A stretch of 64,000 nt of DNA from Octopus bimaculoides (taxonomy: Eukaryota), in contig NC_068982.1 of NCBI RefSeq assembly GCF_001194135.2, forward strand, positions 188,724,929-188,788,928, written 5' to 3'. A program made the position numbers and the translations under genes. The notes under the pieces were generated by a model. It saw only the letters and a list, made by a program, of their open reading frames with translations, was not told the origin of the DNA and did no database searches. Shown in pieces: positions 16,061 to 43,596 of the stretch (position 1 is its first letter; every line of letters begins with the position of its first letter).

Positions 16061-16280
16061 TTAATCAGTATCCTCCCATGGGGCAACAATGTTAAGTTTT
16101 GACGGAACACTTAGGACCAGGCAGGTTGTCGAGTCATCAGCTTCCGTGTCGGTAGAGCTGTTGCTTGGAACATGTCCGAAGCAGGGGCTTGGGACCTCGA
16201 GACATTTTCGTTGTGAACACCCCTGAGTTAGAACTGGTGGCAAACTCATACGGGCGGCTCCTGCTGCACCTGCTGCACAA
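16061..16280 (-). CDS. RGS9: Probable terminal exon of the long RGS isoform, ending IVAPWEDTD*
   Basis: GC-richer, non-repeat island with acceptor ttcttatcctcttttacAG. Phase 2 matches the 40856 donor. 72 codons CAAGAAGAARMSLPP...SKLNIVAPWEDTD then TAA; the end resembles the RGS9-2 VICPWE tail. Confidence 0.75.
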
Positions 16281-18080
16281 CTGTAAAAGAGGATAAGAAA
16301 TTTAGTCGCAAGAAAACACGCACACACATGCAAGAAAAAAAAAACAAAAAACAAAACTGCAGAGTTGGGAGGACGTGCAGCTGTGAAAATAATTGCCTCA
16401 ACAAAATGTCACCTTGAAGTGGTTGATATATCAACAAGAAAGAGCAGTCAAATCCCTCCTCATACTGGTTTCGAATTTTAGCACAAGGCCAACAAGTTTG
16501 GGGGAGGGGTTAAGTTGACTACATTGACCCCAGTGCTCAACTAGTACTTTATTTTATCAACTCCAAAAGGATGAAAGGAAGATCAACCTTGGTGGCGTTT
16601 GAACTCAGAACATAAAAACATGATATACTGCTAAGCATTTTGCCTGATGTGCTAATGATTCAGCCAGCTTGATGCCTTAGATCTCCCTCAAATATTACCA
16701 TTTTATAAAAGAACACATGGTATTCTTTTTACTATCACACTGTTTTTAGAAGATGGGAGTAATAATAAAAATTTATAAGAAATTGAAACAGAATTTGGGA
16801 ATAAAGGTGGAGTTTATTTATTTATTTTTTTTTTTAAGACTATAATTTATTCTTAGAAGTATCAGAGATTACATGTATCATGTGTGATGGTTGTAATGAT
16901 AAATATTTAATGAACACATTTGATGATGTAGTTCTAGATACAGTCTTCCTAAAAAAAAAATGATGGTCATAGTTGGCATGCCTTTGGTCACAGGTTAGCT
17001 TAGAGTCAACTTGGGTTGATGGGAACTAAACAATGTCAGAGCCTGCCATTTTAGCCAAAAAGCATTAGTGAAAAATTAAGGCATGGCTGTGTGGTAAGAA
17101 GTTTACATCTCAACCACATGGTTCCGGGTTCAGTCCTACTATGTGGCACCTTGGGGAAATGTTTTCTACTATATCCTTGGGCTGACCAAAGCCCTGTGAG
17201 CAGATTTGGTAGATGGAAACTGAAAACCTGTCATATATATGTATATATATATGATGGATTCTCCCGCTGTTAGATGACGTATCAGGGTTTGACTATTTCT
17301 TGCCGAACAACCACACAGATGATTTGTTTATAGGGATCAAATGTTTGTGTTCACATAAGCTCACTCCCTCCATCAAATTGACATTACCTGTACAGGTGCA
17401 ACAGGGTGCCACGTGTCAGATGCCGAAGTGATTGCAGAGCAATTGAAATGTAGTGCTTTGCTCAAGAACACAATGCAACGCCCAGTCTGGGAATTGAATC
17501 CATGATCTCGCAATCATGAGTGCAACACCTTAACCACTGAGCCATGCACCTTCACACACATCATCATCATCTTCTAGCATGTTTTTCATGCTGGCATGTG
17601 TTAGATGGTTTGACTGGAATTGTTAAGCCAGAGAGCTATACCAAGCTTGGTTTCTATGGCTGGATGCCCTTCCTAATGCCAGCAACTCCCAGGGTGTTGT
17701 ACGTGCCTTTTATGTGTCACATGTGTGTGTGTGTCCCTCACCACCACTTGACAACCAGTACTGGTGTGTTAACACCTTGTAACTTAGTGGTTTGGCAAAA
17801 GAGACCAATAGAATAAATAACAGGCTTTAAAAAGAAAATGATTACTGAGGTTGATCGATTTGACTAAAATTCCTCAAGGTGGTGCCCCAGCATGGCCACA
17901 GACTAATGACTGAAACAAATAAAAGATAAAAAATACTTTTATTTCTTTACAAGTTTCAAACCATCGGTCTGTGGCCATGCTGGGGCAACTGTCTTTTAAG
18001 GTATAATCATTCCAGTAATTATTTTCTGGGTGTACATTTTATTGACCCCAGAAGGAGGAAAAGCAATACAGGCCTCAGTA

Positions 18081-18155
18081 GGCATATGGTGTAGTGGTTA
18101 AGAGCGTGGGCTACTAACCCCAAGATTCTGAGTTCGATTCCAGGCAGTGACCTGA
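18081..18155 (+). mobile_element. tRNA-derived SINE head, same head as the 47.6-kb element
   Basis: ggcatatggtgtagtggttaagagcgtgggctactaaccccaagattctgagttcgattccaggcagtgacctg with A and B boxes, then (AAT)n. Confidence 0.75.
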
Positions 18156-18662
18156 ATAATAATAATAATAAGAAGAAGAAGGTACGACTATCTCGAGAAT
18201 ATTATTAGTGCACCACTGAAGCAGTGAAATTAAAAATGCTTTAATGACTTCCTTTAGGAAGAGCCGACAAAAATAAAAGTTAAGTCGAAAAAACCTATGC
18301 ATTTCCATATCCTGAAGATGGGGCTGAGATCCTTTAAAAACGTTGATTACAATAGATTTCAGAACTTTGTTATTTGAAACAAACTACGAAAGTCTGATAG
18401 GCAGATTTGAAGGAAGCCTGACGAGAAGATCAAATGAGAATATAGTCGACGCATATTAATAAATACACACGCTTATCAAATAAGTGAACCTCTGGATGAT
18501 TGGCAAACCAATTAGAAACAGCAGCTAAACTCCCTCAACACATCTTATTTTAAAAGTTGACAAGTGGATAATGGAGAGATTGTATAAAAATGAACAGGAC
18601 ATTTGTGGCTGGAATGCTGCTGGGTGATCAGAGCTGGCCTGGGGTTAAGCAAGAAAATGAGG

Positions 18663-19232
18663 AAGTGATTCTCAATTGGGGTTCATAAGCTCCTTGGTGG
18701 GGTCCATATAAGATTTTATTGCGAAAGGTTGGTTATACTTCTACAATACACAAAATACAGCAGAACCTCGCAGTACGAGTGCCCCAATATACGAGCCGAG
18801 ACTTGTGCAAATATTTGAAGTACGAGCGGAAATCTGCAGTACAAGCACACAAATCGTCCTATCTTTAAGGTAATTCAGTTAATAAAACCAGTTTACATAT
18901 TTCTTTTGCATTCTCTTTTTTTATAATTGTCATTTTACTTGTAACCATACCTTTTCTGTTTTTAAAACCCATAAAAAATTATTTTTGAGTGGGTTTTGGG
19001 GGCGGGAACGGATTAAGTATATTTTAGTTAATTTCAATGGGGAAAATTGATTTGTAAAATGAGTAAATCATAAGACGAGCTCAGTCATGGAACGAATTGA
19101 GCTCGTACTGCCGAGGTATCACTGTATTTTAACAATAACAATTTTTTTGAGCTTTGAATTGCTAGGAGGGTCCATTTGGGCAAAACAGAAATCAAAGGGA
19201 CCCATAGGTAAAAAAGCAGTTGAGAATCACTG
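18663..19232. mobile_element. hAT-like MITE hosting a nested pogo/Tigger-like MITE
   Basis: Termini agtgattctcaa...ttgagaatcactg; no clear 8-bp TSD. A related arm occurs near 56295. Confidence 0.5.
18758..19124. mobile_element. Tigger/pogo-like MITE
   Basis: TA|cagcagaacctcgcagtacgag ... ctcgtactgccgaggtatcactg|TA. Confidence 0.75.
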
Positions 19233-19983
19233 CTCTACATTTTAACTGCTAAAAATGAATCTCTCTCATACCATTCCCTACCGTTTTGAAATAAAAGGAA
19301 TCAGTCTACGGAGAGGCCAGTGAGTGAGCAGAGATGTAGGACTGTGAGGTTCCCTGTCAAGGATATGCTTACCTCTCTAGTGCTGATGTCATGGAAAATG
19401 CACCTACTATAAGGTGTGAAGTTTAGAGGGCCCTTAATCTTGTGAGAACCTGATACTTCTAGAATGCTCTGCAAAGTTGGTTGGTGTTAGGAAAAATATC
19501 TAGTTTCAGAAACCAAACCCAAAATGAGGCTTCTGAACAATGTAGATTGGTGATTCCCCTAATATACAAGCTGACTCTGTATACATGGTGACCTGTCCAA
19601 AACCCAGGCTTGTTTGGAAAGTAGCTTATAAAATGAAGATTGTGATGGTTTTGGGTGTACAAAATGATGAGATGATCATGGTTGGAATGTCTTTGATCAT
19701 AACTGTTGATGAGGACTAACTTGAGATCAAACAACTACCACTGTTGAAGGTAAGTTTAATGAAACTTCAGTAGTTAAGGGTATTAACAGGGTATAGATGA
19801 GTTATAAGAAAAGAACATCTGAGATCTTCAGGGAAGCTTTAATATAACAACTTCATATGATTCAAAATTTCTATAGGGATGCCTTGAGTTAGCAACAAGA
19901 ATATTCTCATCTGTTCTTGGCTCTTGTATTCCTATACTGATGCTGTACAGGAGTGAAATTCTTTGCAATCTAGAATTCTGCAA

Positions 19984-20602
19984 CAGGGTGTTCAAAAAGT
20001 CTCTCTGCAGTGAATTTTTTTTTCATCCTGCACATGCGCAACTTGGCTATCGCTGTGTGGGTGGCCAGGTGTCGACCATTGTCCCTCAGTCATTGTGTAC
20101 CCTTCAGCGTGTCGACATGCTAACCATTGAAGAAAATACGTTTTTAGTTGAATGGGTGTTTCAAGCTGGAAACAAATACACAGATACTGTGAAACAGAAG
20201 TACAGCGAAACTTTTCCAAATACTGTTGCTCCACATCGTGACACTGTGCAGGGTTTGATAAGAAAATTTAGAAATACAGGCTCAGTGGAAGACGCAGTAG
20301 GAGGCGGTAGGCCTATTGTTCTTTCAGATGAAACACTTTCCAATTTTTCTGATAAACTGTTGGCAAGCTCATCAAAGACCTTATGCAAATTGTCACAGGA
20401 AACTGAAATCATCCTAGGAAGTGCTCACACGGCAGTAAAAATGAAATTAAATTTTATGTTTCGAAAATGAAGGGCAACACTTTCAACACTTCCTCTAAAG
20501 TTTTTTAAAGTCTGATATATTCTTTTGTAGTCTTTATACCATCTTAGAAATATTTATTTTGCGATAAAATACTTACTGTGGAGAGACATTTTGAACACCC
20601 TA
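19984..20602 (+). mobile_element. Internally deleted Tc1/mariner-superfamily element retaining an HTH-encoding ORF (20117-20470)
   Basis: TIRs cagggtgttcaaaaagtctctctgcag / ctgtggagagacattttgaacacccta, TA on the right. MLTIEE...LIRKFRNTGSVEDAVGGGRP is a transposase paired-HTH with GRP linker; no DDD/E domain. Confidence 0.85.
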
Positions 20603-20974
20603 TACTATCATTCTATACATACTCTAAACATCCTTCATCTCCAAAATAAATAACCTAAGTGGGTTATTATGGGGTACAAACATTGGTGCTGGTACCACAT
20701 GAAAAGCACTGGTGATGGGGATCACATAGAAAGCATTCTGTACATGTTGTAAAGTGGTTGGCGTTAGGAAAGGCATCCAGCCATAGAAGCCATGCCAAAA
20801 CAGACAATGGAACCTGGTGTGTGGCTCCGGGCCTTGCCAACATGGAAAATGGATGTTAATCGATGAAGTTGATGCATAGCTGCACTGCAGCAGTATAGGC
20901 AAAACTCACTGACCACATGTCTGGAAAGAAATACCACCCACCCACCCGCTCCACTTTTTATGTGGCTTTTGCCC

Positions 20975-22250
20975 ATTACTGCAACTCTAGCAATACTTCC
21001 ATCTCAAAAGCAAAACCTGCCTTCGTCCATCGGTTCTTAAGCTCTCCATCTTCCTTAACAAAAGAATTTTTACCAGTTTTGCACAATCTTCCTATTCACA
21101 GCTCCTCAATCATAATGATTCACTTTGCAGGCCTTCAACCAAACTCGACCATATTCCCAAACACACCAAATGAAAAAAACACCTTGGTTAATTCAAAACA
21201 AGGCTACTGGTCCTGTCAGTTTCCCTTCTATTACCCAACAAACAGTATGTTTTAGTACTGACCCCTACCCTCATTAAATGCTTCAATCTTTCTCAGTTTA
21301 CAGCAATATATCAAAATTGCTAACGTGGCCGATGACAGTACTGCCTGATTGGCATTCGTGTCACAGGAACATTAAAAGCACATCCGAGCGTGATCATTGA
21401 CAGGGCCACGGATTGGCTCCTGTGCCTGTGACATGTGAAAAGCACCATTCAAGCGTGGTTGTTGTCATTGCCGCTGGACTGGGTCCTGCACAGATAGCAT
21501 GTAAAAAACACCTTTTGAGTGTGGTCGTTGCCAGAACTACCTGACTGGCCCTCATGCCATTGAAATGTAAAAGCACCCACTACATTCTAGGAGTGGTTGG
21601 CGTTAGGAAGGCCAGCCAGCTGTAGAAACTTTGCCAGATCAGATTGGAGCCTGGCACAGCCTTCTGGCTCACCAGTCCTCAAACCATCCAACCCATGCTA
21701 GCATGGAAAGCAGACGTTAAACAATGATGATGATGATGATATCCTGCTCTTTGGAACCATGATGTATTTCACCTCATCCCAAAGAAGAAACTTCTCCAGT
21801 GCTGCCATCTCTCCATTTGTTGCTCTCACAAAATGCAAAGGCAATGTTATCTATCATTTACTCCAGCATCTTAATTCACCCCCCAGCCTCTGACGACCAC
21901 TAACTACAGCTTCCAAAGTCAGATCTCCAAAAGATCTGGTCTGCTATGTCACTGACCAGTTATAGAATTTGGCAAAAGCAATGTGGTATTTGACATCATG
22001 ACGTCAGAGCATTTGATCTTGTCCAGCAAAAAGATTTTCCAGCCCAATTACTCATCTGTCTCTTATCTCTTGGATAAAATATTTCTCGTAAAATCATATT
22101 ATCACAGCGTGCATTGATGAGACTCTTTGTGACTCAGACTCTATCAACTCTAGTATACTCCAAGACTCAGTTATGTCGCTCTCGCTCATCTTATTGTATA
22201 CGATCAACTCTCTCACTGTCATCTCTAACATTGCTCAATCTGTTTTTTAA
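20975..22250 (+). mobile_element. Decayed CR1/Jockey-group LINE reverse-transcriptase remnant, interrupted by an RTE-tail repeat (21330-21745)
   Basis: Frameshifted RAFDLVQQK (cf. KAFDRVWHK) and SINSSILQDSVMSLSLILLY (cf. INSGVPQGSVLSPTLFLLF). Confidence 0.6.
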
Positions 22251-22285
22251 ATCTCACAACGAGAGATATTCAGCAACAGTACTTT

Positions 22286-22730
22286 GTGGTAAAGATTGTT
22301 TGCCAACATAACATGGCAGTCCTGGTTTAGGACTAATGTTGCTGTAATTTAGCCCCAGGAGACATCGCTATACGATACGATTTGTGTCCTTATATTTTTG
22401 AACAAGGGAATCTAGCACCCCCACTCAGTTGAATAGTAATTTTCTAATTTATAAATTAGTGACTAGTTGTCACTTTGAAAACTATATATTTTGAACAGGA
22501 ATTTGGCAGCGCCACCTCTAGCTGAACAATTACTCTGTGCTGATGAAGAGAAATAACCCAGAAATTGCGATACACAGATATTGTTTTGAGCTGAGTGGGG
22601 GTGCTAGATTCCCTTGTTCAAAAATATAAGGATACAGCCAGCTGGAGACGATGTCTCCGGTGGCTAAATTACAGCAACATTCGTCCTAAACCAGGACGGC
22701 CGTGTTATGTTGGCAAACAATCTTTACTAC
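22286..22730. mobile_element. Foldback element with about 140-bp inverted arms and a central hammerhead motif
   Basis: 22286-22428 is the reverse complement of 22591-22730 (gtggtaaagattgtttgccaacataac... / ...gttatgttggcaaacaatctttactac). Confidence 0.85.
22534..22578 (+). ncRNA. Minimal type I hammerhead ribozyme motif (Penelope-associated type)
   Basis: UCUGUG CUGAUGA A GAG aaauaa CCC A GAAA UUGCGA UA CACAGA. 6-bp stem I, full core, near-palindromic stem III (AUUGCGAU), one mismatch in stem II. Activity untested. Confidence 0.7.
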
Positions 22731-23098
22731 ATTGCTCAATCTGTCAGCAACTAGATACCACATCATCATCAAACATTTATTTTTCCATGCTGGCCAGCCA
22801 GAGAGCTGCACCAGTCTCCAACTGTCTGTTTTGGCATGAGTTCTAAGGTTGGAAGCCCTGCCTGGTGCCAACCACTTTACAGAGTCTAGTGAATGTTTTT
22901 CATGTGGCACCATCACAAGACAAAGACCTCTCAGCTGTGAGAGCTTTTTTCAGTTTCCATTGACCAAATCCACTCACAAGGCTTTGGTTGGCCTGAGGCT
23001 ACAGTAGAAGACATTTGCCCAAGGTGCCACACAGTGGGACTGAACCTGCAACCATATGATTGGGAAGCAAACTTCTTAGCACACACCCTAATGATGAG

Positions 23099-23135
<37 letters not shown>

Positions 23136-23179
23136 AAAAGTTCCAAGATCAAAAAACAAAACCTCTCTTTCCATGTAGC

Positions 23180-23690
23180 ATTCTCAGAGTTATTTGGATT
23201 TTTAATATTTTCGTCATATTTTTATTGATTTTTGCGAATAGATTGCAAGACTAAACCATTGTTTGCTTTAACAGATCAGCTTTGTTGTGAGCTGCAAGTT
23301 GATTTGCAGCAGATTTAGAAAAAGAGATAAGTTCAGCTTAAAATGGAAAAAGTATACGTCGTATCAGACTTACTTGCCAGAGTACATGTAGATTACTTTA
23401 CATTGCTTTTAATTCTCCAGCAAGTTTTATCTGCATTGATCTTCTTTTACCGATGCTTTGCAATTCATGTAACCACTTTCTTAGAACTGGATTTATTCTC
23501 TGACAAAATGCTTTGGATCCTCAACATTCAAATATCTAGACATTGAAAGTTTGTTATTAAGATGTTATTACAGATGAAATCTTAGATGAACTAAGCTGAA
23601 GAACTTTTGCGTTTCTCTTCCAACCTTTGTTCTTGGTTTTGTGTTCAAACCTTACTCCAGGAATCATGTTGTGTTCTGAGTTGAGCACAG
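23180..23690 (-). mobile_element. Possible decayed pogo/Tigger-like transposase remnant
   Basis: NPVLRKWLHELQSIG...MQIKLAGEL resembles a CENP-B/Tc5-type HTH; many stops. Confidence 0.35.
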
Positions 23691-23735
23691 TAATAGCTGC
23701 AGGGGCAGCAATGGCCATGTGGTTATGAAGTTTAA

Positions 23736-24045
23736 CCCTTGAGCATTGAAACCAGCCATATCTAGCCTTAGTATTTTACTTGTTTTATCTTCAAACCAGC
23801 CAGATCTGGCCTCTTGCACCTGACCTACAATATCATTCTAAAAATAAACAATCACATCTTTGAAATATCAAAGCCACAAAATAATGTATGATTAATTAAA
23901 AACATTATGAATAAATAAGCATTACGTTTAACCTTTAGCATGCTGTAGACGCATCATGTTGCCATACAAGTTTTCTCCCCTTTCAGTGCAACACAATGTG
24001 CTGAAGCATGCTAAAGGTTAACAGAATAATCTGAATGCTAAAGGG
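23736..24045. mobile_element. piggyBac-like TTAA MITE, family 1, carrying a nested 86-bp MITE
   Basis: TTAA|cccttgagcattg...ctgaatgctaaaggg; body interrupted at 23928-24021. Confidence 0.75.
23932..24017. mobile_element. 86-bp miniature piggyBac-like element
   Basis: TTAA|cctttagcatgct ... agcatgctaaagg|TTAA; perfect 13-bp TIR and TTAA duplication. Confidence 0.8.
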
Positions 24046-24069
24046 GTAGCAATGGATGTGGGGGTTATG

Positions 24070-25510
24070 TTATTCTATTGTCTCACTTCTTTCTTTAACT
24101 GCCAAGGTGGACTGTTACAGCCTCCCATATTGCACTTATTAGTTTTTATTGTGTTTACATGGTACTGGTGCTTTGTATGCAACCCAGTTTGAATTAAGGA
24201 TGTTCTGAAGGATACTACTGATGTCTCTGGAATCATAAAATGTGAACCAGTTGGGACCCTATAACTCAGTACAAAAGGAGTTTCTGTCAGAGCAAGCAGT
24301 TTAAAGGTGAAGGTGTCCTTTCTTCCTACCAATAAAGAAACAGCTTGGCAATGATCATAGCGTGATTAGAATTGCCTTAAGATTTTCTGATAGTGACGCT
24401 GATAACTTTCAGGAGCAGTGGTAAATAGCTTTGTCCATAGTTTTGTTACCTCTTGTGGAGAGGTGACTACTTGGGACCAGTTTGAGTCTAGCACTAAGTC
24501 AAGGAAATAATTTGTACTTTGTGGCCTATGAAAAGTTTCCTAACCAGTCTCTGAGTAATTGAAATCACCAGTGATAAAAATAAAATATGAGGCCTGATCA
24601 AAAACATAGTTATCTCGAGGATGTCAAAAAGCTGTGTATCTTGATGGTAGTTGGAGAAATGGAAAACAATTTCAAATAGAAGTATTGAATGTCCACCTTC
24701 CATACTGGCATGGGTGGGACAGTTTCACAAGAGCCGGCCAGGCAGAAGCCTGCACCAGACTTCTGTGACTGTTTTAGCAGGATTTTTACAGTTGGATGCC
24801 CTTCCGAAAACCCCAACCACTCAGTGGAGTGGACTTAGTGCTTTTTACGTAGTACAAACACAGGTGAGGTTAGTTTTGGCAAGGATTTTACGGCTGGATG
24901 CCCTTCTGAACACCAACCATTTTACAGTGCAAGACAAAAAACTTTCGGGGGAGGGGGAGGTGATCTTGTGTGACATGTTTATACAAATGCTGCAGAAAAA
25001 GAACTTCTTGCTGTGATTGGTTCAAATCATGGCAAAGAATTGCTGAAGAGCTTGGGTGACCAGACCATCGCACCACTCTGACAGCGATTAGAGGTGACTT
25101 TGCAAAACAAGTTGTAGCCAGCCATGCTAAAAACCATGTTATATAATTATGAATGGATCCACGTTTCCATACCTGTAAAAGACAGCAATCTATAACTGCA
25201 TCAAAGCCTATCATGACCCATAAATGATGGTGTAGTGTTCTTGTTTCCTGAGGCTTTGATATTGCTGTCCATTGTTTGTTTGATATCTAAAGTCCAGCTT
25301 GTATCTTTCTTCTATGTATCACCAGACTTAATAAATTTCTACATCTGTCCATAAACACATGGACTGGAACTCTTCCTTGACACCGAGGCAAGTCAGGCAT
25401 GGAAAGTACCAATTTGGTAGTTGGGCCATTTCCCAGAATCTATCCATCATAGAATTATAATGTATCTTCTTATGGCTTGAGATTGTTGGAAAGTTAGTGA
25501 CACATTGCAC
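24070..25510 (-). mobile_element. Possible highly decayed RTE-like LINE (endonuclease/linker region) with inserted RTE-tail repeat
   Basis: Weak, frameshifted resemblance only (TWIHS cf. TWMHPRS; linker-like helical segment). Confidence 0.3.
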
Positions 25511-25828
25511 TCTTTAGTGCTTAAACCAGCTTTAACTGACCCAGATATACTTGTTTTATGTTCAGATTGGCCAGGTTTGGCCTTTTACACCTACCCTACA
25601 ATGTCATTCTAAAAATAATCAGATCATTAAAATCTCAAAGATACAAATTAATGCATGATTAATTCAAAACAATGTGAATAAATAAATATATTTGACAGAG
25701 TAATCTGAATGCTAAAGGGTTTAGACAGATCGAAACCTAAAATTGATTGATTTGGCAGAGGCAGTGATCTTTATTGATCACAAAGTCAACAAATCCAATT
25801 TAATCGTGCAGACATTAAAAATAAAATA

Positions 25829-26384
25829 TGAGGCCTGATCAAAAAGTATCAGGACTGGCGCCATAAAAAGAAAGCTACAACACAAATTTGATGTTTGATC
25901 TCCTTCGAAGTAGTCCCTTTCTGAAGCCACACAAACTTTATCTGGCATCATTTCCATTGATGCAAGCATTCCTGGAACTCCTTTTTGGGATTTGCAAGCA
26001 GCTGCCTCATTGCAGTCTTTTGGATTTCCTTAATATCTTCAAATCTTGTTCCTTTCAAGTGGGATTTGATTTTGCCTTGGTTTCGGGGTCATAGCTGTAG
26101 ACCCACAATCCATCGCCTGTTAGGGCCGTTTTCAAAGAGTCTTCATCTTCCTCAACACATTCAAGGAGATCCTGAACAGCTGGAACTTGATCTTCTTCTT
26201 CTTGAGACAACCACACTCTACACACTTTACTTCAAAGCACTTCCATACACAACGGAAGAGAGCAAGAACATTATAACTCGCATAACAGAGTTCAAGTTCA
26301 GTCTGTGCCAAATGGCTTCACTCTGCATACTTTAGCCCCATTACCATAGCAACAGTCCTAATACTTTTTGATCAGACCTCCTCA
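25829..26384 (-). mobile_element. Internally deleted mariner transposon
   Basis: TA-flanked TIRs tgaggcctgatcaaaaagtatcaggact / agtcctaatactttttgatcagacctc. Minus strand retains LTGDGLWVYSYDPETK (first catalytic-D motif) and CVASERDYFEGD (mariner C-terminus). Confidence 0.9.
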
Positions 26385-28470: not shown

Positions 28471-29430
28471 ATAATGTTGAAATAAAATACTTGGAAAAAA
28501 AATTGAAATGAAAATAAAATTTAAAAGATTTAAATATGGCAATAAAAGAAATAAATTGAATTTTCAGAAAATTCTCTATATAGATCATGTATAAAGTCTA
28601 ACCTGGTATTGTACTACAGTGTTAGTTGAGGAACACTCCCACCACGACCACCACTGTTAGATTGGTTGATGGTAATTTGGTAAAGAAGCAGTCAGCTTTA
28701 TGTAAATAAATCATTGATTGTTTTTGGAGCAGTGGGGTGGGGGGAATTGGTGATTCTAATGTTTCTTAAGAAGAATGGCAGTGTAGGGTGTGGCACTCTG
28801 CATTCTGCCAATTCCTTCATGTACTTTATTTTTTACTTTCTTTGTTTATCTTTCTCCAAATCTCTCCTCCTCCCCCTTACTCTTTGCCTCTCCCCTCTCT
28901 CTCTATCTTTATTGCTGGTTTTTACTTCAATATTTTCTATCTTTCTCCCTTTCTGCACACAGACACACATGCATATATGAGTCAAGCCTAATTGTGTTTA
29001 GCTGCATCACTACCCCTCCACGCCTATCTCTATATATATGACAGAGCAATAGTTTGAAATTTTGGCACCCATGCTGGTGGCACGTAAAGAGCACCACTCG
29101 AGCGTGGCCGACACCAATGTCAGTGGCACGTAAAATATACCATTTGATCATGTTCGATGCCAGTGCCACCTGACTGGTTCCTGTGCTGGTGGCACGTAAA
29201 AAGCATCATTTGAGCATGGTTGATGCCAGTACTACCTGATTGGGCTCCGTGCCAGTGACATGTAAAAAGCATCCACTACACTCTTGGGGCTGGTTGGCAT
29301 TAGGAAGGACATCCAGCTGTAGAAACATTGCCAAATCAAATTGGAGCCTGGTGTAGCCTCCAGGCTTGCCAGTCCTCAGTCAACCTGTTCTACCAGCATG
29401 GAAAGTAGATGTTAAACTATGATGATGATG

Positions 29431-31200: not shown

Positions 31201-32709
31201 AATTTCATCAAACTATTTCTCTGTCATTTATGACTTTATACCCTCCTTATTGTTTTCTCTTGTGTTGTACTATATATTCTATGTTTTGTAGAATGATACA
31301 TTAAAGAGCTTTTTTAATGAGTGCTACTGGATTACTTGAAGCCATATACCGCGGCTTGCCAATGCCAGTGCTGCCTTGACTGGCTCCCGTGCTGGTGCCA
31401 CGTAAAAAGAACCATCTGATCGTGGTTGATGCCAGCCCCCTCTGACCCCTGTGCTGGTGCCACGTAAAAAAGGCACCCACTACACTCTCGGAGTGGTTGG
31501 TGTTAGGAAGGGTATTCAGGTGTAGAAACTCTGCCAGATCAGATCAGAGCCTGGTGCAGTCTCCTGGCTTGCCAGTCCCCAGTCAAACCGTCCAACCCAT
31601 GCCAGCATGAAAAGTCGATGTTAAACAATGATGATGGTTATATATATACATACACACACACATATATATATATATATCCATACGTACACACACCCACAGT
31701 GCTCTAGCTTGGTCACAGTTCAAAGACTGAAACAAGAAAAGATAAAAAGAAAGTGTATGCATGACATCATCATCACTTAGCATCCAGTTTTCCATGCTGA
31801 CATGGGTTAGAAGGTTTGAGAGGCTGGCAGGCCAGAAGACTATGTGAAGCAGCTCTTGCATTGGCTTTTGGCACGATTTCTACAGCTGGATGCCCTTTCT
31901 AATGCCAGTCACTTTGTAGGATGCTTTGTATGTGGTACTGGCGCTAGTGAGGTTACCAAGTATCTCACAGGACAAGGCCCTTCCACTGAAGAGGGCAAGG
32001 TGGCTTTGTGTAAGGTGATGAGATGTTAAAGTGGGCTAGGGGAACAGGACCAGGTATCTTGCTGTAGGGGGCATACATAATTACCCCAGTTAGAAAAGAA
32101 AGAGGATGGTGTTGTGACATAGCCTCAAGTTACAAGATGAATAAAAGGGAGGGGGTGGGGATAAATAAGTTCATGGGTTTGAGTAAGTTTGTGTGGTTGC
32201 TGTTTAACCATGGGTTGATGGATTCAGGTATGATGTGTTGTTGTTTGTATTTAATGCAGGTTAGCTGTGATCCAGCAGACCTATGGGCAAATGAATATAA
32301 GCATGGCTGATTGGTTAAGAAGTTTGCTTCATAATCTTGAGATCTCCAGTTCAGTCCCAGCATGTGGTATGTTGGGCCATTTTTTAATTTTTTAACAACA
32401 GGTTTGACAGGAGCTGCACCCATTTCCATTGTTTATTTTGGTATGGCTACTACACCTGGGTGTCTTTCCAAATGCCAACCACTTTACAGAGTGTGCTGGG
32501 TACTTTTCATGTGGCACCAGCACCAATGCTTTTTATGTGACTTATAAATAGTAGTTTCAACTGGAAGGCCAGTTAGTGATTGACAAAGTCCTTAGTGAGT
32601 GATGCCAAGAAACCTGTGGACTTTTTGATCATTTTAGAAATGTGGTTTGTACAATGCAGACAATTATTGACAATAATGCCAGGGTCATGTTCACCAGTAG
32701 ACTTCTTAA

Positions 32710-32920
32710 CCCTTTAGTATTCAAAGCAGTCATATCCAGCCCAGTTATTCAGTTTTACATTCAAACTGGCCAGATCTGGCCTCTCACACCTACCCTACAA
32801 TGTCATTCTAAAAATAAGCAATCGCATCATTGGAATCTTTAAGCTGTAAGATGTTGCATGATTAGTTCAACACAATATGAATAAATAAGCATTACATTTG
32901 ACAGAGTAAGTCTGAATGGG
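32710..32920. mobile_element. piggyBac-like TTAA MITE, family 1
   Basis: TTAA|ccctttagtattc ... tctgaatggg|TTAA; internal sequence shared with 34942-35162. Confidence 0.8.
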
Positions 32921-33999
32921 TTAAGGTTGATGTGGATGGAGTTGGTAAATTCAAAGTTTTTTCCTCCTAAAATGATTTCAGTGCCCTTGTTCACAGCCAA
33001 CTTGAGTTGCCAATCAACAGTCCATTGCTATATTGTGTCCAGATCAGAAAGCAACATTTTGTAAAGTACCAATTTTCTTTTTTGTAAATATAGGCGCAGG
33101 AGTGTGGCTGTGTGGTAAGAAGCTTGCTTCCCAACCACATGGTTCTGGGTTCATTCCCACAGCATGGCACCTTGGGCAAGTGCCTTCTACTATAGCCTCG
33201 GGGCAACCAAAGCCTTGTGAGTGGATTTGCTATGTGTGTTTTTGCATCTGTGTTTGTCCCCCTATCCCCGCTCCCACCATCACTTGACAACTGATGCTGG
33301 TGTATTTATGTACCCCATAAGTTAGCAGTTCGACAAAAGAGACCAAAGAATAAGTCCTGGGGGCGATTTCTTTGACTAAAAAGGTGGTGCTCCAGCATGG
33401 CCACAGTCAAATGACTGAAACACGTAAAAGAATATAGTAGGATGTGATTTGAAGATTTGGCTGCTATTTCTTGCAAGTCAATAAGTTCCCACATTGGATC
33501 ATGCATCATAAAGTGAAGGTAATGGAAGAAATACATAGAAGATGGGTTATAATTATTTTCTTTCCTGTTTATTCTGTATAATTATTAGACTTGTCGTAGC
33601 CCCCTTTCGGACCCTTTAGGCCACAATTCTGATAATAAATTCATCTTTAAATTTCCTTATTGGCCTTTTTCTTGTATTCAATGGGGCATCATGAATCTAA
33701 ACGGATTTTTGTGTCATCAGAATAGGAGAATAGACAAGGACATCTGCAAGTGAGAGGAGACCAACCATCTCAAACCTAACTGAGGATGATTTGGGTGTAG
33801 AGTGTTATGACTTAGTTAGGCCTGGCAGACAGCACTTCGAAGTAGAAACTGATGTCTGTTAACATATAAGGTGTGTCTATTTGTGTGTTTATACTGACAC
33901 ACGCACGCCCACACAACACACACATTTATACCATATACATAAGCATACACACATATTTAAGTACTAATCTATATATATATCTATGTATGTAGATATGTA

Positions 34000-34034
<35 letters not shown>

Positions 34035-34941
34035 GCATGTATGTTATAGAAAGAGCAGCACATGCCATCTGATGTTCGGGCACAAATATAAGAAGCCCAA
34101 TGTACCCATCATGACTACCCATCTGGTAAGGGTACACCAGGCACATGCATCACAACCCTACGTGCACAAATGGTGACTTCATATGGAGTTAAACAGCGCA
34201 TGACCTTGCAGGTGGGGCCCAGTTAGAATCTTTTTCTTCAGACAGAATAGCCCATCCTGCTCAAAAGGTCTCTGAATAAGGGTTGTTTAAGGATGATAAA
34301 CACCCATGTTTCCAGGGATGAATTGTTCAAACCTCAAAGAATCCCTCACTAATCAGGGCAAATATGTTTTCCCCCCACCACTCCTACTCACGATCAGAGA
34401 CACATATTATCAACCAATAAGGGACATGCTCAACTGATTGTATCTATGTATGTATGTGTCTATCTGTGTATATATGCGCATACATATATGGAAATTTCTA
34501 AAGCAACTAGATTTCCAACAATTTCTATGAGTTTTCAGTTGTTTGACCACTCAGAAACTCTCCCCTACTGAATTACAGTCTAAAAGGCTGAGTATTCCAG
34601 ACACATGTGGAATTAATAATGTAATTCTCAGGCTGGATGTATGAGACATTTGTAATGCAGGTTCTATCTGATGTCCCTTCAAACAGTCTCTGTCTTCAGA
34701 GAGACTGGAGGTTCAGGTAAAGACATTTGTTCAAGGTACCACAAAGTTGGATTTGAACCCTAGACCTCATGATAGCAAAGCAAATTGAACAGTTTTTATT
34801 TTTTACTTGTTTCAGTCATTAGACTCCAGCCATACTAGAGCATCACCTTGATTTTTTAGTAGAATGAATCGACCCCACTTCTTCATTTTTTAAAGCCTGG
34901 TACTTATTCTATCAGTCACTTTTGCCAATCTGTTAAGTTAA

Positions 34942-35162
34942 CCCTTTAGCATTCAAACCGGCCATATCCGGCCAAAAGTATCCTGCCTGTTTTATGTTAG
35001 AACTAGCCAGATCTGGTCTCTCACACCAACCCTACAATATCGTTTTAAAAATTAGCAGCTACCTTATCAAAATCTCATAGCTACAAGATAATACATGATT
35101 AGTTCAAAGCAATGTGGATAAAAAAGCATCAATTTTGGCAGAATAATGTGAACACTAAAGGG
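34942..35162. mobile_element. piggyBac-like TTAA MITE, family 1, inserted in a SINE
   Basis: TTAA|ccctttagcattc ... actaaaggg|TTAA. Relatives at 23736-24045, about 25515-25720, 32710-32920 and 46859-47077. Confidence 0.85.
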
Positions 35163-35404
35163 TTAAAGGGACATAAATACACCAATGCTAGTTTGTCAAA
35201 CAGTAGTGGGGGACAAACACAAAGACACACAACAGGCTTCTTTCAGTTTCCATCTACGAAATCCACTCATAAGGTATTGGTCAGCTTGTAGCTATAGTAG
35301 AAGACAATAGCCTGAGGTGCTCTGCAGTGGGACTGAACCTGGAACCATGTGGTTGGGAAGCAAACTTCTTACTACACAGCCACACCTGCATCTACCCATG
35401 GTAT

Positions 35405-35448
<44 letters not shown>

Positions 35449-35907
35449 ATATACATATAATACACATACACGTGTGTGTGTATATGGATGTACACGTATG
35501 TGTATGCATGTGTGTATATATATATACACACATGTGATGCATGTGTGTGTAAGCGACAGTATAGCTATATAGAAATAAGCTAGATGGTTCCTGCTACTTT
35601 CATTGATAAGAAATGTTGAATTTCCATCATTTAAAGATAAGAATTGCAGGAATTAAGAACCATTCCTAAGATTGTTTCTCACCATTTTACAGAATTGCAG
35701 TATTTTTATGTCTTCTCTTCCCACTTTCTTTTTTCTTTCGTTTTTCTGTAGCAACCATTTTCCATTTTATTTCTTATATTTAAGATTTTTTTTCCTCAAT
35801 TCCCTGTCACAAACTAACTTAGATTACCAGCTGAAGTGTGTTTACTGCTTGTGATATATAATTATTATTTTGGGCTACTGCTACTAAAAAAATGTTGCCG
35901 GTGATGT

Positions 35908-35946
<39 letters not shown>

Positions 35947-36589
35947 AATGGCATGGCTCTGTGGGAAGAAGCTTGCTTCCCAACCACATGGTTATGGGTT
36001 CACCTTTTGCTAGTGTCTTCTATAGGCTCAGGCCAAACAAAGCCTTGTGAGTGGATTAAGCAGATGGAAACTAAAAGAAGCCCATCATGTGTATATATAC
36101 ATGTGTGTGTGTTTTTCTCCCCTACTACTCCTTGACTACCAGTGCTAACTCAACAGTTCGATAAAAGAGACTGATAGAATAAGTACCAGGCTTAAAAAAA
36201 GTATTAAGGTCAATTCATTCGACTTAAAGTTCTTGAAAGCAGTGCCCCAGCATGGCTGCCAATGTCCAGTGAATGAAACAAGTAAAAAATGAAATATACA
36301 AACACATATGTACATATATATGATCTTCACCATCATATTTTATAACTACTCTTCCATGTTTGCGTGGATCAAATGGAATTTGTTGAAGCAGATTTTCTAT
36401 GGTTGGACGCTCTTCTTGTTATTAATCTGCACTTGTTTCAAAGTAAGATAATATTTCCCCCATGACTGGACATGTTTACGTAGACAAACGAAAACCAAAA
36501 AGTACTGTTTGTATGTTTGTGACTGTCACAATAACCGTGAGATGTGAAGACAGGGAGACGCAATCACACACACACATGCACACAAGGGG

Positions 36590-36770
36590 CTGTTGAAAGA
36601 AAATACAGGAGAATCAGTCAGTTTATTCAACATATTCCCCTTTCATATTCATACACTTCTTGCAGCGGCTGCCATTGTTTCTAAGCCTTACAGAAGAATT
36701 CGGAAGGTTGAGCCTCCAACGATGTCTTTCTCAATACACTTAAAGCCAAAACCTTTGCAAAACCGCCTTG
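36590..36770 (-). mobile_element. Mariner transposase 3' fragment
   Basis: Minus strand RCKKCMNMKGEYVE* is a mariner C-terminal motif. Confidence 0.6.
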
Positions 36771-36866
36771 TGTATGTATATATATTTTTTTTTCTGTGAG
36801 TTAGAGGTTGGGAAATCAACCAACTGAGGGATAGTGCCTATCCAATATACTGCTGGNNNNNNNNNN

Positions 36867-36940
<74 letters not shown>

Positions 36941-37419
36941 TTTCTGTGAGTTAGAGGTTGGGAAATCAACCAACTGAGGGATAGTGCCTATCCAATATAC
37001 TGCTGGTAGCGTATCCAATTATTCATACCCAAATGCATGGAGGATCTCATTGCCACTTGGCACAAACAGCTGTAAGGAACTGTTCTTTTGCTCTTTTCTC
37101 TAATATTAACATGTAACACATAGTTACTACATGTGTATGTTTTTTTTCTAATGCTTTCTAATGCTTTGGAATAAATAAACACACTGGAATTGTCTACCGG
37201 ATGATGTATGTCGTTTTGTATCTCTCCATTTTCTAATTTGCTATATATATATATACATACATATATATATATATATCCCATAATTTAGTGTATCCTCAGA
37301 TTGGAACCTGGAGCAGCTCTCCAGCTGACCAGTTTCAGTTAATCCTTCTAACCCATGCTAGCATGGAAAGCAGATACTAAATGATAATGATGATGTTTTA
37401 TTTCGTTTTGTACTAATCA

Positions 37420-37660
37420 GCATCATTGTTTTAACATCCATTTTTGCATGATTGCATGGGTCAGATGGAATTTGTTGAGGTAGAAATCCACGGGTCAGAG
37501 TTTCTAAGGCAAGAAACTGACCTGTTTCCAAGCCAGCTAATATTTCCCTTTGGTCAGATGTTTTCCATAGAAAACTGGAAACAAGCATCACTTGTATGGT
37601 TATGATGGTCATTTACAATCATCATGTCATTTCAAGACAAGGGTACACATATACACATGC
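37420..37660 (-). mobile_element. Further RTE-tail-like retroposon family (H)
   Basis: catcatt...ccattttt/tgcatgggtcagatggaatttgttgagg...taatatttccc; relatives at 36325-36580 and 48375-48535. Confidence 0.6.
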
Positions 37661-38759
37661 ATGTGTGTGTGTGTATATATATATATATAAATATAAGGAC
37701 TGGCTTTTGTGCGGGTGGCACATAAAAGACACCATTTCGAGCATGGCCGTTTTCGTGCGGGTGACACGTAAAAGCACCCACTACACTCTCTGAGTGGTTG
37801 GCGTTAGGAAGGGCATCCAGGTGTAGAAACTCTGCCAAATTAGATTGGAGCCTGGTGTTGCCATCCGGTTTCACCAGTCCTCAGTCAAATCGTCCAACCC
37901 ATGCTAGCATGGAAAGCAGATGTTAAACGATGATGATGATGATGATGATGATAAATACAGGGTTGGCCAAAAGTCACCCGACAGTAAATCAAAATTCCAT
38001 ATATACTTAATATTCAATTTTATTTATTCATTCCAATTATGAATGTTTAATAATTGAATGCTGTGAGTTAAAATCACTGTCTTTTTTTTTTTCAACATTT
38101 GTCACNNNNNNNNNNNNNNNNNNNNNNNNNNNNNNNNNNNNNNNNNNNNNNNNNNNNNNNNNNNNNNNNNNNNNNNNNNNNNNNNNNNNNNNNNNNNNNN
38201 NNNNNNNNNNNNNNNNNNNNNNNTATATATATATATATATATATATTGTTGCCAGTACCGCCAGACTGGCCCTCATGCCGGTGGCATGTAAAAAGCACCC
38301 ACTACACTCTCGGAGTGGTTGGCGTTAGGAAGAGCATCCAGCTGTAGAAACTCTGCTAGATCAGATTGGAGTCTGGCGTAGCCACCTGGTTTGCCACTCC
38401 CCAGTCAAATCGTCCAACCCATGCTAGCATGGAAAGCGGACGTTAAATGATGATGAAATAAAAACATACACATACAAACATACACATATACAAACATACA
38501 AGCACACACACACACATATTTATTTATGTATGATAGACTTCTCTCAGTTTCCATCTACCAAATTCCCTCACAAAGCATTGGCTAGCCCTGAGCTATACAA
38601 GACACTTACCCAAGGTGCCATACAGTGGGATTGAACCCAAAGCCACATGGTAAGGAAGCAAGCTTCTAAACCACACAGTCATACTTGTGCTTATTATGTT
38701 ATTACCTATCCGTCTTTCCTTGTATAAATGACATTCACAGTTGGAACTAGGTTACAGTG

Positions 38760-39190
38760 ATCAGGTCATAGTTGTGTCAAAAAATACTTTGATTTGGAAT
38801 AATCTCCAAGAGAAAGTCATAGACAGGGATACTATTAGTTTAATGAGGATCATCTGCTATTTCAGTAAGGAATTTCACATGCAGTTAGGTGTCTATCCAG
38901 GCCTGGCTTTCATGCCCTCTTCAATTTATCAAAGTTTTCTTGGCCATAAGAGAAAAGTTTAAGTCTGGTTATCCATGAAACCTTGTTTATGTCAAAAACA
39001 GTTCTCACAGTTGGATGTGTCAGGGATTTAGAAAGTAACGAGCCAACTTGTAAGCAAAAGCTAGAATTAAGTAAGCCATAGCAAAGACAAAAAGTTTGAA
39101 TTAGCAGAAATGAAGAGTGGACTGATCTGCCATCTGGGAGCAGGTTTTGGTTGATATGTAGAAAAGGGATTGATTCTCTATGATGTATCA
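38760..39190 (+). mobile_element. Decayed RTE reverse-transcriptase remnant
   Basis: FSKEFHMQLGVYPG followed, after a frameshift, by EKFKSGYP*NLVYVKN (cf. SEEFEVKVGVHQGS...EFRTGCPWELLYADD). Confidence 0.55.
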
Positions 39191-40851
39191 ACATTGTCAT
39201 CGTTGTTTAATGTCCGCTTTCCATGCTGGCATGAGTTGGATGGTTTGAATGAGGACTGGCAAGACAGGAGGCCGCACCAGGCTCCAGTCTGATTTGGCAG
39301 TGTTTCTACAGCTGGATGCCCTTCCTAACACCAACCACTCTGAGAGTGTAGTGGGTGCTTTTTACGTGCCACTGGCATGGTAGCCAGTCAGGGGCTATTG
39401 GCCACAGCTACGATATTGGTTTTATTTGACTAAACAGGTCTTGTCAGTATAAAATATGTGTGCACAAGACAAGCAACAGGATCACAAGAAGGCTGATAAA
39501 GAAGAGCGCCTAGATAACAGTAGATTTATGATGAATGGCCTTCCAGCCTTGACCGTCCCATCTTTTTATTATATCAACTACTACAAAGTATCAGTTCTTA
39601 TAAGAGACAGATGGATGTGATTTGAGGCAGATCTGTCTGTTATTTTAAGCAAGTTTCCTCATAAACAGTTGGGAGGAATATATAAAAGTTACTCAGAGTT
39701 TGAGATTTGGTTGCTATATCTAGCACATTCCCTCAGCATGTTGTATAATGTGAAATTCTAATGATGTAATAAAACCACCTCATCACTGAATTACCTTTGA
39801 TCTTTTAATTGCTTCAGTCATTAGACCGTGGCCAGGCAGGGGCACCGAAGAATTTTAGTTGAATGAATTGACTCCAGCACATATTTTTTAAAGCCTGGTG
39901 CTTATTCTATTGCTCTCTTTTGCCAAACTGCTATGTTACTGGGATGTAACTACACCAACACTAATTTTCAAGGATGGGGGGGGGGGCAAACACACACATA
40001 TGTACACATACACACATGATGAGCTTCTTTCAGTTTCCATCTACCAAATCCACCCACAGGACTTTAGTCAGCCCAAGGTCATAGAAAATGATGCTTGCCC
40101 GAGGTGCCACATAGTGGGACTGAACCCTGAACCATATGGTTGGGAAACAAACTTCTTACTACACAACCACCCCATCACTGAATTATGAAGAAGCATGGCA
40201 TGTAGGAGGAGCTTGGTGGGGATTGCAAGAACTGAATCAATAACAGAAGAATAATGGTTAAACATGGAGACAATGGAACATGCCTTCACACCAAAAAAGG
40301 AAAGGGAAAAATGCAAATAAAAACTAACAAAAACGACAGTAACAACAACAACAACAAAATAGTTTTTTTTTTCACATTTAATAATAAATGATAATAAAAT
40401 AACAAAAAAAATAACAAGAATTATAAACACAAAAATTAACATCGAAAATAGTAAAAACAAGGAAACAGAACAAGTAACACACAAAGGATCTCTGTAATTA
40501 CAACAACTTGACAAAGAATTAGCATTGCCGCAATATAACAATCAAGATGATGATAATGATTACAGTAATTACATTATCATAACGAACAAACAAAATTAGA
40601 TAAATGAAAAAAAGGGTGAAAATAATTTTTTTTTTTAAATGCGACCAAAAACTGGTAGTTTGTGGCAGTAGTTAGAAATAAATGGGTTTATAAGAGGAAA
40701 AATTGGGTAAAAATGAGAAAAAATGCCAACAGAAATGATTAAAAGGGCATGATGCACAAAAAAGTGGGAGAAAAACCGTAAACAAAAACTGAAAAGAGGC
40801 CAAGTTGACTAAGTCCACGATTCCGTGTTTGTGAAGGAATGGTGCTTTTAG

Positions 40852-41032
40852 TTACTTGTATGCAGCTGTGTTATTTCCGAGATCCTTTAGGTTTCCAGTA
40901 CTATAGGAATGACACGGAGCGCCAGGAGCTCCAAGACCCATTTCGGAGTGGTCACTTGAGGTGCTACCTCTACGTTTCATGAGAGGGCTAGGGGTTGGGG
41001 TACGTTTTTTGGTACTTGTAAACGAGAAGAAC
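40852..41032 (-). CDS. RGS9: R7-family RGS exon after the RGS domain; ends at in-frame TAA (40852-40854) or splices at a donor after 40856
   Basis: Strong acceptor ttttttttctttgcAG; phase 2 continues the 50261 exon: (K)FFSFTSTKKRTPTPSPLMKRRGSTSSDHSEMGLGAPGAPCHSYSTGNLKDLGNNTAAY-K*. TAC AA|GTAACT offers a possible donor overlapping the stop. Confidence 0.85.

Positions 41033-43565: not shown

Positions 43566-43596
<31 letters not shown>

What the first reader, a model, noticed from the sequence alone, without database searches (positions are those of the whole stretch)
16061..41032. RGS9-1/RGS9-2-like alternative C-termini via a stop codon overlapping a splice donor
Seen: the exon ends TAC AAG TAA CT. 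Read-through gives a short protein (...AAYK*) followed by U-rich sequence with ATTAAA at 40377-40382. Using AA|GTAACT makes a 177-nt phase-2 exon that joins in frame to a phase-2 terminal exon 24.6 kb away. Established: vertebrate RGS9 makes a short retinal form and a long striatal form by alternative 3' processing. Inference: a cephalopod R7 RGS may use the same switch, either ancestrally or convergently, possibly retina versus brain.
Basis: partly seen in the sequence, partly recalled or inferred. Interest (0 to 1): 0.7.

Follow-up and report, generated by a model that had tools for sequence, protein, structure and literature searches.

The report
Ordinary last intron of RGS gene
The exon and its far-away partner are the real, evolutionarily conserved last two coding exons of an R7-type RGS signalling gene, but the stop codon sitting on the splice site is an automatic by-product of the intron's reading phase, so there is no evidence for an RGS9-like short/long protein switch.

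Summary
Every sequence fact in the finding holds. On the minus strand, a 177-nt exon (41032-40856) ends TAC AA|GTAACT. Read-through gives ...AAYK*. ATTAAA lies at 40382-40377. Joining 40856 to 16280 is in frame through TAA at 16063-16061. The join is strongly supported. Three compact orthologous gene copies from environmental and SRA assemblies (L001, L006, L007/L008) have the same exon order, phase-2 donor and phase-2 acceptor. Their terminal exon ends in the same LEVP...N[IV]VAPWE[DE] tail, 0.4-0.7 kb downstream instead of 24.6 kb. The "stop overlapping the donor" carries no information. Any phase-2 intron starting GTAA, GTGA or GTAG reads through into a stop. All four donors seen in this window do so, as do five of six orthologous donors; the exception starts GTATGT. 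A[AT]TAAA occurs about every 500 nt on this strand. What remains is suggestive only: this is the gene's weakest donor, it precedes a very large intron, and an unusually U-rich unique 0.68 kb follows it. No transcript data were reachable, so a short isoform is neither shown nor excluded. The two assembly gaps lie inside the intron and do not affect the frame. Orthologues also carry a 39-nt microexon that was not found here.

The parts
57753..57866 (-). Exon encoding the end of the GGL domain and the linker (…[28 protein letters not shown]…). Donor CTG|GTGAGT, phase 2. The 5' boundary is approximate: the acceptor is at 57866 or 57859.
   Evidence: matches RGS7 residues 287-316 (E=1e-8) and RGS9 residues 254-282. 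Conserved in L001 4399-4566.
54068..54361 (-). First RGS-domain exon, 294 nt, phase 2 at both ends. Donor CAG|GTGAGT. Read-through gives R then TGA.
50261..50389 (-). Second RGS-domain exon, 129 nt, phase 2 at both ends. Donor AAA|GTGAGT. Read-through gives K then TGA.
40856..41032 (-). The 177-nt penultimate coding exon, phase 2 at both ends. It encodes FFSFTSTKKRTPTPSPLMKRRGSTSS…HSYSTGNLKDLGNNTAAY. Conserved motifs are KRRGS.S and HSYSTGNL.
   Evidence: Homologues in L001, L003-L009.
40850..40855 (-). Donor GTAACT; with the exon's last three bases it reads CAA|GTAACT. It lacks G at -1 and at +5, so it is the weakest of the four donors in the window. The in-frame TAA is at 40854-40852.
   Evidence: No other donor-like GT with the same end phase exists in the exon: the only other internal phase-2 GTs are CTC|GTTTAC (41023) and TCC|GTGTCA (40915).
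40175..40851 (-). Unique, unusually U-rich stretch at the start of the intron (T 0.44-0.58 per 100 nt). It ends where a SINE-like repeat begins.
40377..40382 (-). ATTAAA hexamer, followed by TGTG, an A10 run (40372-40363) and a (TTG)n/U-rich tract. It looks like a poly(A) site, but the hexamer alone is at chance frequency.
16281..40855 (-). Intron of 24,575 nt as assembled. It contains gaps at 38106-38223 and 36857-36866, many SINE-like repeats and a transposase-like ORF on the + strand.
   Evidence: No conserved or well-flanked extra exon was found.
16281..16365 (-). Long polypyrimidine tract and acceptor (…ttttgttttttgtttttttttttcttg…tttcttatcctcttttacag|).
16061..16280 (-). Terminal coding exon with a phase-2 acceptor. 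It encodes CAAGAAGAARMSLPPVLTQGCSQRKCLEVPSPCFGHVPSNSSTDTEADDSTTCLVLSVPSKLNIVAPWEDTD, followed by TAA at 16063-16061.

Best explanation
The finding covers the last two coding exons of an R7-family RGS gene (GGL-RGS type, related to RGS6/7/9/11) on the minus strand. The 177-nt exon is an ordinary internal exon. Its phase-2 donor at 40856 is spliced across a lineage-expanded intron of about 24.6 kb to the phase-2 acceptor at 16280. The resulting protein ends in the conserved acidic tail …VPSKLNIVAPWEDTD. This long form is the ancestral and presumably main product.

The stop codon on the donor is not a device. In a phase-2 intron the first intron base G finishes the codon, and intron bases 2-4 (T-A/G-A/G in the donor consensus) form the next codon. 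That codon is TAA, TGA or TAG for most donors.

Shown here: exon boundaries, frames, and conservation of exon order, phases and tail. Inferred: that splicing is efficient. The U-rich stretch after the weak donor may act as an intronic enhancer of U1 recruitment, as known for TIA-1-type U-rich elements. That is established knowledge of the mechanism and was not tested here.
For: (1) R7 identity. The RGS domain matches RGS9 at E=2.6e-37, then RGS7 and RGS6. The [10 protein letters not shown] linker exon matches RGS7 at E=1e-8.

(2) Orthologous compact loci L001, L006 and L007/L008 carry RGS-A, RGS-B, the ex177 homologue and the terminal exon in the same order and on the same strand. Terminal-exon homology: LEVPS…KLNIVAPWE at E=1e-6 and E=5e-6. 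A further terminal exon (P0007/L010) reads TCLALAVPNKVNIVAPWEVSD*.

(3) The donor of the ex177 homologue is phase 2 in all eight loci. The terminal acceptor is phase 2 in all five loci where it is seen. Direct joins are open to a stop at the same place after APWE.

(4) Read-through stops follow directly at all four donors of the window and at L001, L003, L004, L006 and L007-9. They do not at L005, whose donor is GTATGT and which reads on for 32 codons.

(5) The ATTAAA is at chance frequency.
Against: The donor CAA|GTAACT is weaker than the gene's other three donors (all GTGAGT) and than all orthologous donors (GG|GTRAGK). The intron is about 40 times longer than in the compact orthologues. The first 0.68 kb of the intron is a unique sequence in the 0.5% tail for T content. 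It holds an ATTAAA followed by a GU-rich tract. Weak 5' splice sites and long introns are the features known to favour intronic polyadenylation (my knowledge of the literature on composite terminal exons). No RNA data could be consulted, so constitutive use of the donor is inferred, not shown.
Confidence: 0.78

Rival explanations
1. A true RGS9-1/RGS9-2-like switch. In some tissues the weak donor is skipped and the transcript is cleaved and polyadenylated about 0.5 kb into the intron (ATTAAA 40382-40377). This gives a short protein ending …AAYK without the NIVAPWE tail. Elsewhere the long form is made.
For: The gene's weakest donor, lacking G at -1 and +5. A 24.6-kb intron. A unique U-rich 0.68 kb directly downstream, with T=0.474 in the 0.5% tail. 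ATTAAA followed by A10 and (TTG)n, a plausible hexamer plus downstream element. A precedent in the same protein family (PMC3223194).
Against: The stop-on-donor is generic. The hexamer is at chance level. Read-through adds one residue and no conserved peptide. Orthologues keep the same stop only when the donor consensus dictates it. Their introns are 0.4-0.7 kb, and L001 and L006 have no poly(A) hexamer in them. No transcript evidence exists. The U-rich stretch is equally explained as a splicing enhancer or as plain intron composition.
Confidence: 0.17
2. The exon at 16280-16061 belongs to another transcript, and the RGS gene simply ends at AAYK*.
For: Only the large distance, and the lack of transcript data here.
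Against: The same tail exon follows the ex177 homologue at 0.4-0.7 kb in three other gene copies, in the same phase. In all orthologues the ex177 homologue ends at a donor, not in conserved coding sequence.
Confidence: 0.02
3. The join is real but not direct. One or more small cassette exons, such as the 39-nt microexon seen in orthologues, lie between 40856 and 16280. They may sit in an assembly gap or be too diverged to recognise.
For: A conserved 39-nt microexon, phase 2 at both ends (G-SS[GS]D[VLI]K…), with strong ag|GAG…|gtaagt sites lies in the corresponding intron. Its coordinates are L001 6634-6672, L006 3690-3728 and L007 688-726. Two gaps lie in the window's intron.
Against: No motif match, no BLOSUM-scored 39-nt candidate with good splice sites, and only two well-flanked small open exons in phase 2. 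Both of those lie in repeats. The gaps are flanked by (TA)n and are probably microsatellite. Because such an exon is a multiple of three bases, its presence would not change the frame or the C-terminus.
Confidence: 0.15

Closest known systems
Vertebrate RGS9 (RGS9-1 retinal short form, RGS9-2 striatal long form)
   Same: Same protein family (R7 RGS). The RGS domain's best solved-structure match is RGS9. The topology also matches: a post-RGS exon whose 5' splice site, if unused, leads to an early stop, and if used leads to a distal C-terminal extension. Tissue-specific short and long RGS9 forms are documented (PMC3223194).
   Different: In RGS9, read-through encodes a specific functional tail and both mRNAs are documented. 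Here read-through adds one residue, no transcript evidence exists, and the arrangement is the default for phase-2 introns. The C-terminal exons show no detectable similarity to any solved RGS chain beyond the RGS domain. The subfamily is ambiguous: the linker exon is closer to RGS7.
Composite terminal exons / intronic polyadenylation in metazoan genes
   Same: A weak 5' splice site, a very long downstream intron, and a U-rich region with a poly(A)-like hexamer. These are the features associated with this class (my knowledge of the literature).
   Different: These are only predisposing features. No cleavage site has been demonstrated.
C-terminal splice variation in RGS6/RGS7
   Same: R7 members with several alternative C-termini (PMC8805202 abstract). 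Here all exons seen are phase 2 at both ends and multiples of three bases, so skipping any of them, or including a microexon, keeps the frame.
   Different: No variant has been observed for this gene. The point rests on exon arithmetic only.
Invertebrate R7 RGS proteins (C. elegans EGL-10 / EAT-16 type)
   Same: Expected orthology class for a protostome gene with GGL and RGS domains (my knowledge).
   Different: Not compared here.

Membership tests
R7 subfamily of RGS proteins | RGS domain of the R7 type | tested here: met
   the best PDB matches are RGS9 (E=2.6e-37), RGS7 (E=1.8e-33) and RGS6 (E=3.6e-33), ahead of the R4 members.
R7 subfamily of RGS proteins | GGL (G-gamma-like) domain upstream of the RGS domain | tested here: inconclusive
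   Only the exon for the C-terminal end and linker lies in the window (about 57866-57753). It matches RGS7 residues 287-316 at E=1e-8 and RGS9 residues 254-282 at E=0.013. The body of the GGL domain was not located.
R7 subfamily of RGS proteins | N-terminal DEP and DHEX domains | not tested
   These exons are expected upstream of the window's end (beyond 64000).
R7 subfamily of RGS proteins | Obligate partnership with G-beta-5 | not testable with these tools
   Biochemical property.
RGS9-type alternative C-termini (short versus long form) | A 5' splice site whose non-use leads to an in-frame stop | tested here: met
   It is not discriminating: all four donors in the window and five of six orthologous donors have the same property.
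RGS9-type alternative C-termini (short versus long form) | A specific, conserved peptide encoded by the read-through | tested here: not met
   Read-through adds a single residue (K here, G in orthologues). In L005 it adds 32 unconserved residues.
RGS9-type alternative C-termini (short versus long form) | A functional poly(A) site downstream of the read-through stop | tested here: inconclusive
   ATTAAA at 40382-40377 sits in a U/GU-rich context. However, such hexamers occur every 496 nt, and 57% of random positions have one within 480 nt.
RGS9-type alternative C-termini (short versus long form) | Both mRNA forms observed, with tissue specificity | not testable with these tools
   No transcripts of this gene from the source species appear in the protein collections searched.

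The most novel reading that the evidence does not exclude
The giant intron, together with decay of the donor to CAA|GTAACT, may have created a lineage-specific intronic poly(A) site. The gene would then make a tail-less R7 RGS (…AAYK) in some tissues, such as photoreceptors, and the NIVAPWE-tailed form in others. That would be a convergent copy of the vertebrate RGS9-1/RGS9-2 switch.
Probability: 0.08. Interest if true: 0.5.

Novelty: new member of a known kind. Interest (0 to 1): 0.15.

Why it matters
As posed, the finding would be a convergent or ancestral isoform switch in a key G-protein regulator. The evidence instead shows an ordinary gene end. The work has three uses. First, it confirms a correct gene model across a 24.6-kb gapped intron. 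Second, it gives a general caution: a stop codon overlapping a donor is automatic for phase-2 introns and should not be scored as a sign of alternative termini. Third, it identifies a conserved invertebrate R7-RGS C-terminal tail (LEVP…N[IV]VAPWE[DE]), a KRRGS.S/HSYSTGNL exon and a 39-nt microexon. I did not find these described in the papers searched, and they could be functional docking or phosphorylation elements.

Tried and rejected
I used ortholog-guided tblastn instead.
Run with the exact terminal-exon translation, it gave only two weak hits. One (P0007) is a true terminal-exon homologue. The other (P0006, 4072 aa) was not examined and is probably spurious.
- The protein collection holds no copy of these exons from the source species or close relatives. 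Direct transcript or annotation evidence for either isoform was therefore unobtainable.
- The metagenome scan gave three more ex177 homologues, but their contigs end before any terminal exon.
- The search for a window homologue of the 39-nt microexon was negative.
- Literature searches for the RGS9 exon-17 detail and for cephalopod R7 RGS found nothing specific.
- Alternative in-frame donors inside the 177-nt exon were considered and rejected. The only other internal GTs with end phase 2 are CTC|GTTTAC and TCC|GTGTCA, which do not look like donors.
- Alternative acceptors in the CAG-rich start of the terminal exon were rejected. By hand reading, they lie 8, 11, 17 and 20 nt in, and all are out of frame.
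Full report
**What is in the sequence**

The gene runs on the minus strand. The 177-nt exon starts after …ctttgcag at 41032 and ends …GCA TAC AA at 40856. The next bases are GTAACT. Read through, the frame gives K and then TAA (40854-40852).

The distal exon starts after a long pyrimidine tract and …ctcttttacag at 16280. It stays open for 72 codons to TAA at 16063-16061. Both junctions are phase 2, so the join reads AA+T = N and the frame continues: …NNTAAY-N-CAAGAAG…KLNIVAPWEDTD*.

ATTAAA is at 40382-40377. Neither exon contains N. The two flagged gaps (36857-36866 and 38106-38223) lie inside the intron and are flanked by (TA)n runs. They affect only the stated intron length and the chance of a hidden small exon. 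They do not affect the frame.

**What gene it is**

Upstream in the window, on the same strand, are three more exons:

| Exon | Coordinates | Length |
|---|---|---|
| Linker / end of GGL | about 57866-57753 | approximate |
| RGS-A | 54361-54068 | 294 nt |
| RGS-B | 50389-50261 | 129 nt |

The RGS domain's best solved-structure matches are RGS9 (E=2.6e-37), RGS7 (E=1.8e-33) and RGS6, ahead of all R4-type RGS proteins. The linker exon (…[21 protein letters not shown]…) matches RGS7 residues 287-316 (E=1e-8) and RGS9 residues 254-282.

This is therefore an R7-family RGS gene. Whether it is of the RGS9/11 or the RGS6/7 type is not settled. DEP and DHEX exons are not in the window. I could not verify that the organism is a cephalopod.

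**Comparative test of the join**

The protein collection contained no copy of these exons from the source species. It did contain ORF fragments from environmental and SRA assemblies that span orthologous, compact genes. I fetched their contigs and added three loci from a metagenome scan. This gave eight loci with a homologue of the 177-nt exon (L001, L003-L009). Conserved motifs in that exon are KRRGS.S and HSYSTGNL.

In L001, L006 and L007/L008 the same strand carries a homologue of the distal exon. It lies 0.4-0.7 kb downstream and shares the motifs LEVP…, …VP… and N[IV]VAPWE[DE], with a stop at the same place. Support is E=1e-6 and E=5e-6 in the reciprocal search of the window. An exhaustive search of 1.8 billion representative proteins with the distal exon found one more homologue. 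It reads …TCLALAVPNKVNIVAPWEVSD* and lies on a Tara Oceans scaffold, again behind a phase-2 acceptor.

In every locus the donor of the 177-nt exon homologue is phase 2 and at the homologous codon. The terminal acceptor is phase 2 wherever it is seen, and the direct join is open. The idea that the 16-kb exon belongs to another transcript is close to excluded.

**Why the stop on the donor means nothing**

In a phase-2 intron the first intron base completes a codon, and intron bases 2-4 form the next codon. With a consensus donor (GT, then A or G, then mostly A) that codon is TAA or TGA. GTAG gives TAG.

All four donors visible in this window are phase 2, and all read through into an immediate stop. 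The linker exon gives W then TGA, RGS-A gives R then TGA, RGS-B gives K then TGA, and the 177-nt exon gives K then TAA.

The orthologous ex177 donors behave as follows:

| Locus | Donor | Read-through |
|---|---|---|
| L001 | GG\|GTAAGG | 1 residue, then stop |
| L003 | GG\|GTAAGG | 1 residue, then stop |
| L004 | GG\|GTAGGT | 1 residue, then stop |
| L006 | GG\|GTGAGG | 1 residue, then stop |
| L007-9 | GG\|GTGAGT | 1 residue, then stop |
| L005 | GG\|GTATGT | 32 codons |

The stop follows the donor consensus and shows no sign of selection for a short protein. Read-through adds a single residue and no conserved peptide.

The poly(A) hexamer is also uninformative. A[AT]TAAA occurs 129 times on this strand, once per 496 nt. 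57% of random positions have one within 480 nt.

**What is left in favour of a short form**

Three things are real:

- The donor CAA|GTAACT lacks G at -1 and at +5. It is weaker than the gene's other donors (all GTGAGT) and than every orthologous donor. No donor-like alternative GT with the same end phase exists in the exon.
- The intron is about 40 times longer than in the compact orthologues.
- The first 0.68 kb of the intron is unique sequence with T=0.474 and GC=0.28 over 500 nt. These are the 0.5% and 3.6% tails of the window, and the three other intron starts have T of 0.29-0.36. The stretch ends at a SINE-like repeat. The ATTAAA within it is followed by A10 and a (TTG)n/U-rich tract.

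Weak donors and long introns are the known setting for intronic polyadenylation. U-rich sequence just after a weak donor is also the known setting for U1-recruiting enhancers. Both statements rest on my knowledge of the literature and were not tested here. These features leave a short isoform possible, at about 0.17 for any real polyadenylated form. The chance of a tissue-specific functional switch is lower. The features do not demonstrate either.

**An extra exon in the orthologues**

The intron between the two exons holds a conserved 39-nt microexon, phase 2 at both ends, with strong splice sites:

| Locus | Coordinates | Peptide |
|---|---|---|
| L001 | 6634-6672 | SSGDVKGDHAER |
| L006 | 3690-3728 | SSSDIKENHTSG |
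| L007 | 688-726 | SSGDLKGADSGS |

I found no homologue in the window's intron by motif, by BLOSUM scoring of all open 39-nt windows, or by listing small well-flanked phase-2 exons. It may be lost, diverged, or hidden in a gap. Being a multiple of three bases, it would not alter the frame or the tail.

**Comparison with the known**

Vertebrate RGS9 does make a short retinal and a long brain form (PMC3223194), and the topology here is analogous. Of the features that define that system, only the trivial one is met. The read-through peptide test is not met, the poly(A) site test is inconclusive, and the transcript test could not be run.

**Verdict**

This is a real and correctly modelled gene end. 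The proposed switch is unsupported and rests on a generic property of phase-2 introns. Interest is low. The side observations (conserved tail, phospho-like motif, microexon) are modest additions.

Noticed in passing
L001 6634-6672; L006 3690-3728; L007 688-726: A conserved 39-nt microexon, phase 2 at both ends (G-SS[GS]D[VLI]K…), with ag|GAG…|gtaagt sites. It lies between the ex177 homologue and the terminal exon in three compact orthologues. No homologue was recognised in the window's 24.6-kb intron.
   Followed up: partly
window 13315-13408 (+): Full-length match to U6 spliceosomal RNA (Rfam RF00026, 73 bits, E=1e-16), about 2.7 kb beyond the RGS gene's stop codon. Whether it is a gene or a pseudogene was not assessed.
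   Followed up: no
window, more than 20 copies, e.g. about 40172-39860, 56507-56848, 53200-53485, 43460-43767, 17084-17225: A SINE-like repeat of about 300 nt (65-90% identity between copies), often next to (TA)n or (CA)n microsatellites and assembly gaps. One copy starts right where the U-rich unique stretch after the 177-nt exon ends.
   Followed up: partly
window 19940-20470 (+): A 176-aa ORF inside the big intron. Its sequence (…FPNTVAPHRDTVQGLIRKFRNTGSVEDAVGGGRP…) looks like the helix-turn-helix N-terminus of a Tc1/mariner-type transposase. This is my impression and was not scanned against Pfam.
   Followed up: no
window 54361-54068, 50389-50261, 41032-40856: Every coding exon seen is a multiple of three bases and phase 2 at both ends. 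Skipping any one of them, including the 177-nt exon, would keep the reading frame. That arrangement is permissive for cassette-type C-terminal variants.
   Followed up: no
window 40985-40962 (KRRGSTSS) and 40912-40889 (HSYSTGNL); coordinates worked out by hand: Two motifs of the 177-nt exon are near-invariant across eight loci. KRRGS fits a basophilic (PKA/CaMK-type RRxS) kinase consensus, which is an inference only.
   Followed up: partly
window 40372-40363 and 40636-40626 (minus strand): Genomic A10 and A11 runs in the U-rich stretch. They would cause oligo-dT internal priming and could give false evidence for a polyadenylated short form.
   Followed up: no
L001 7341-7343 and L006 about 3149-3152: The stored gene calls P0003 and P0004 read TGA as W. 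They were therefore predicted with a non-standard genetic code on what are clearly animal contigs, so the calls run past true stops and splice sites.
   Followed up: no
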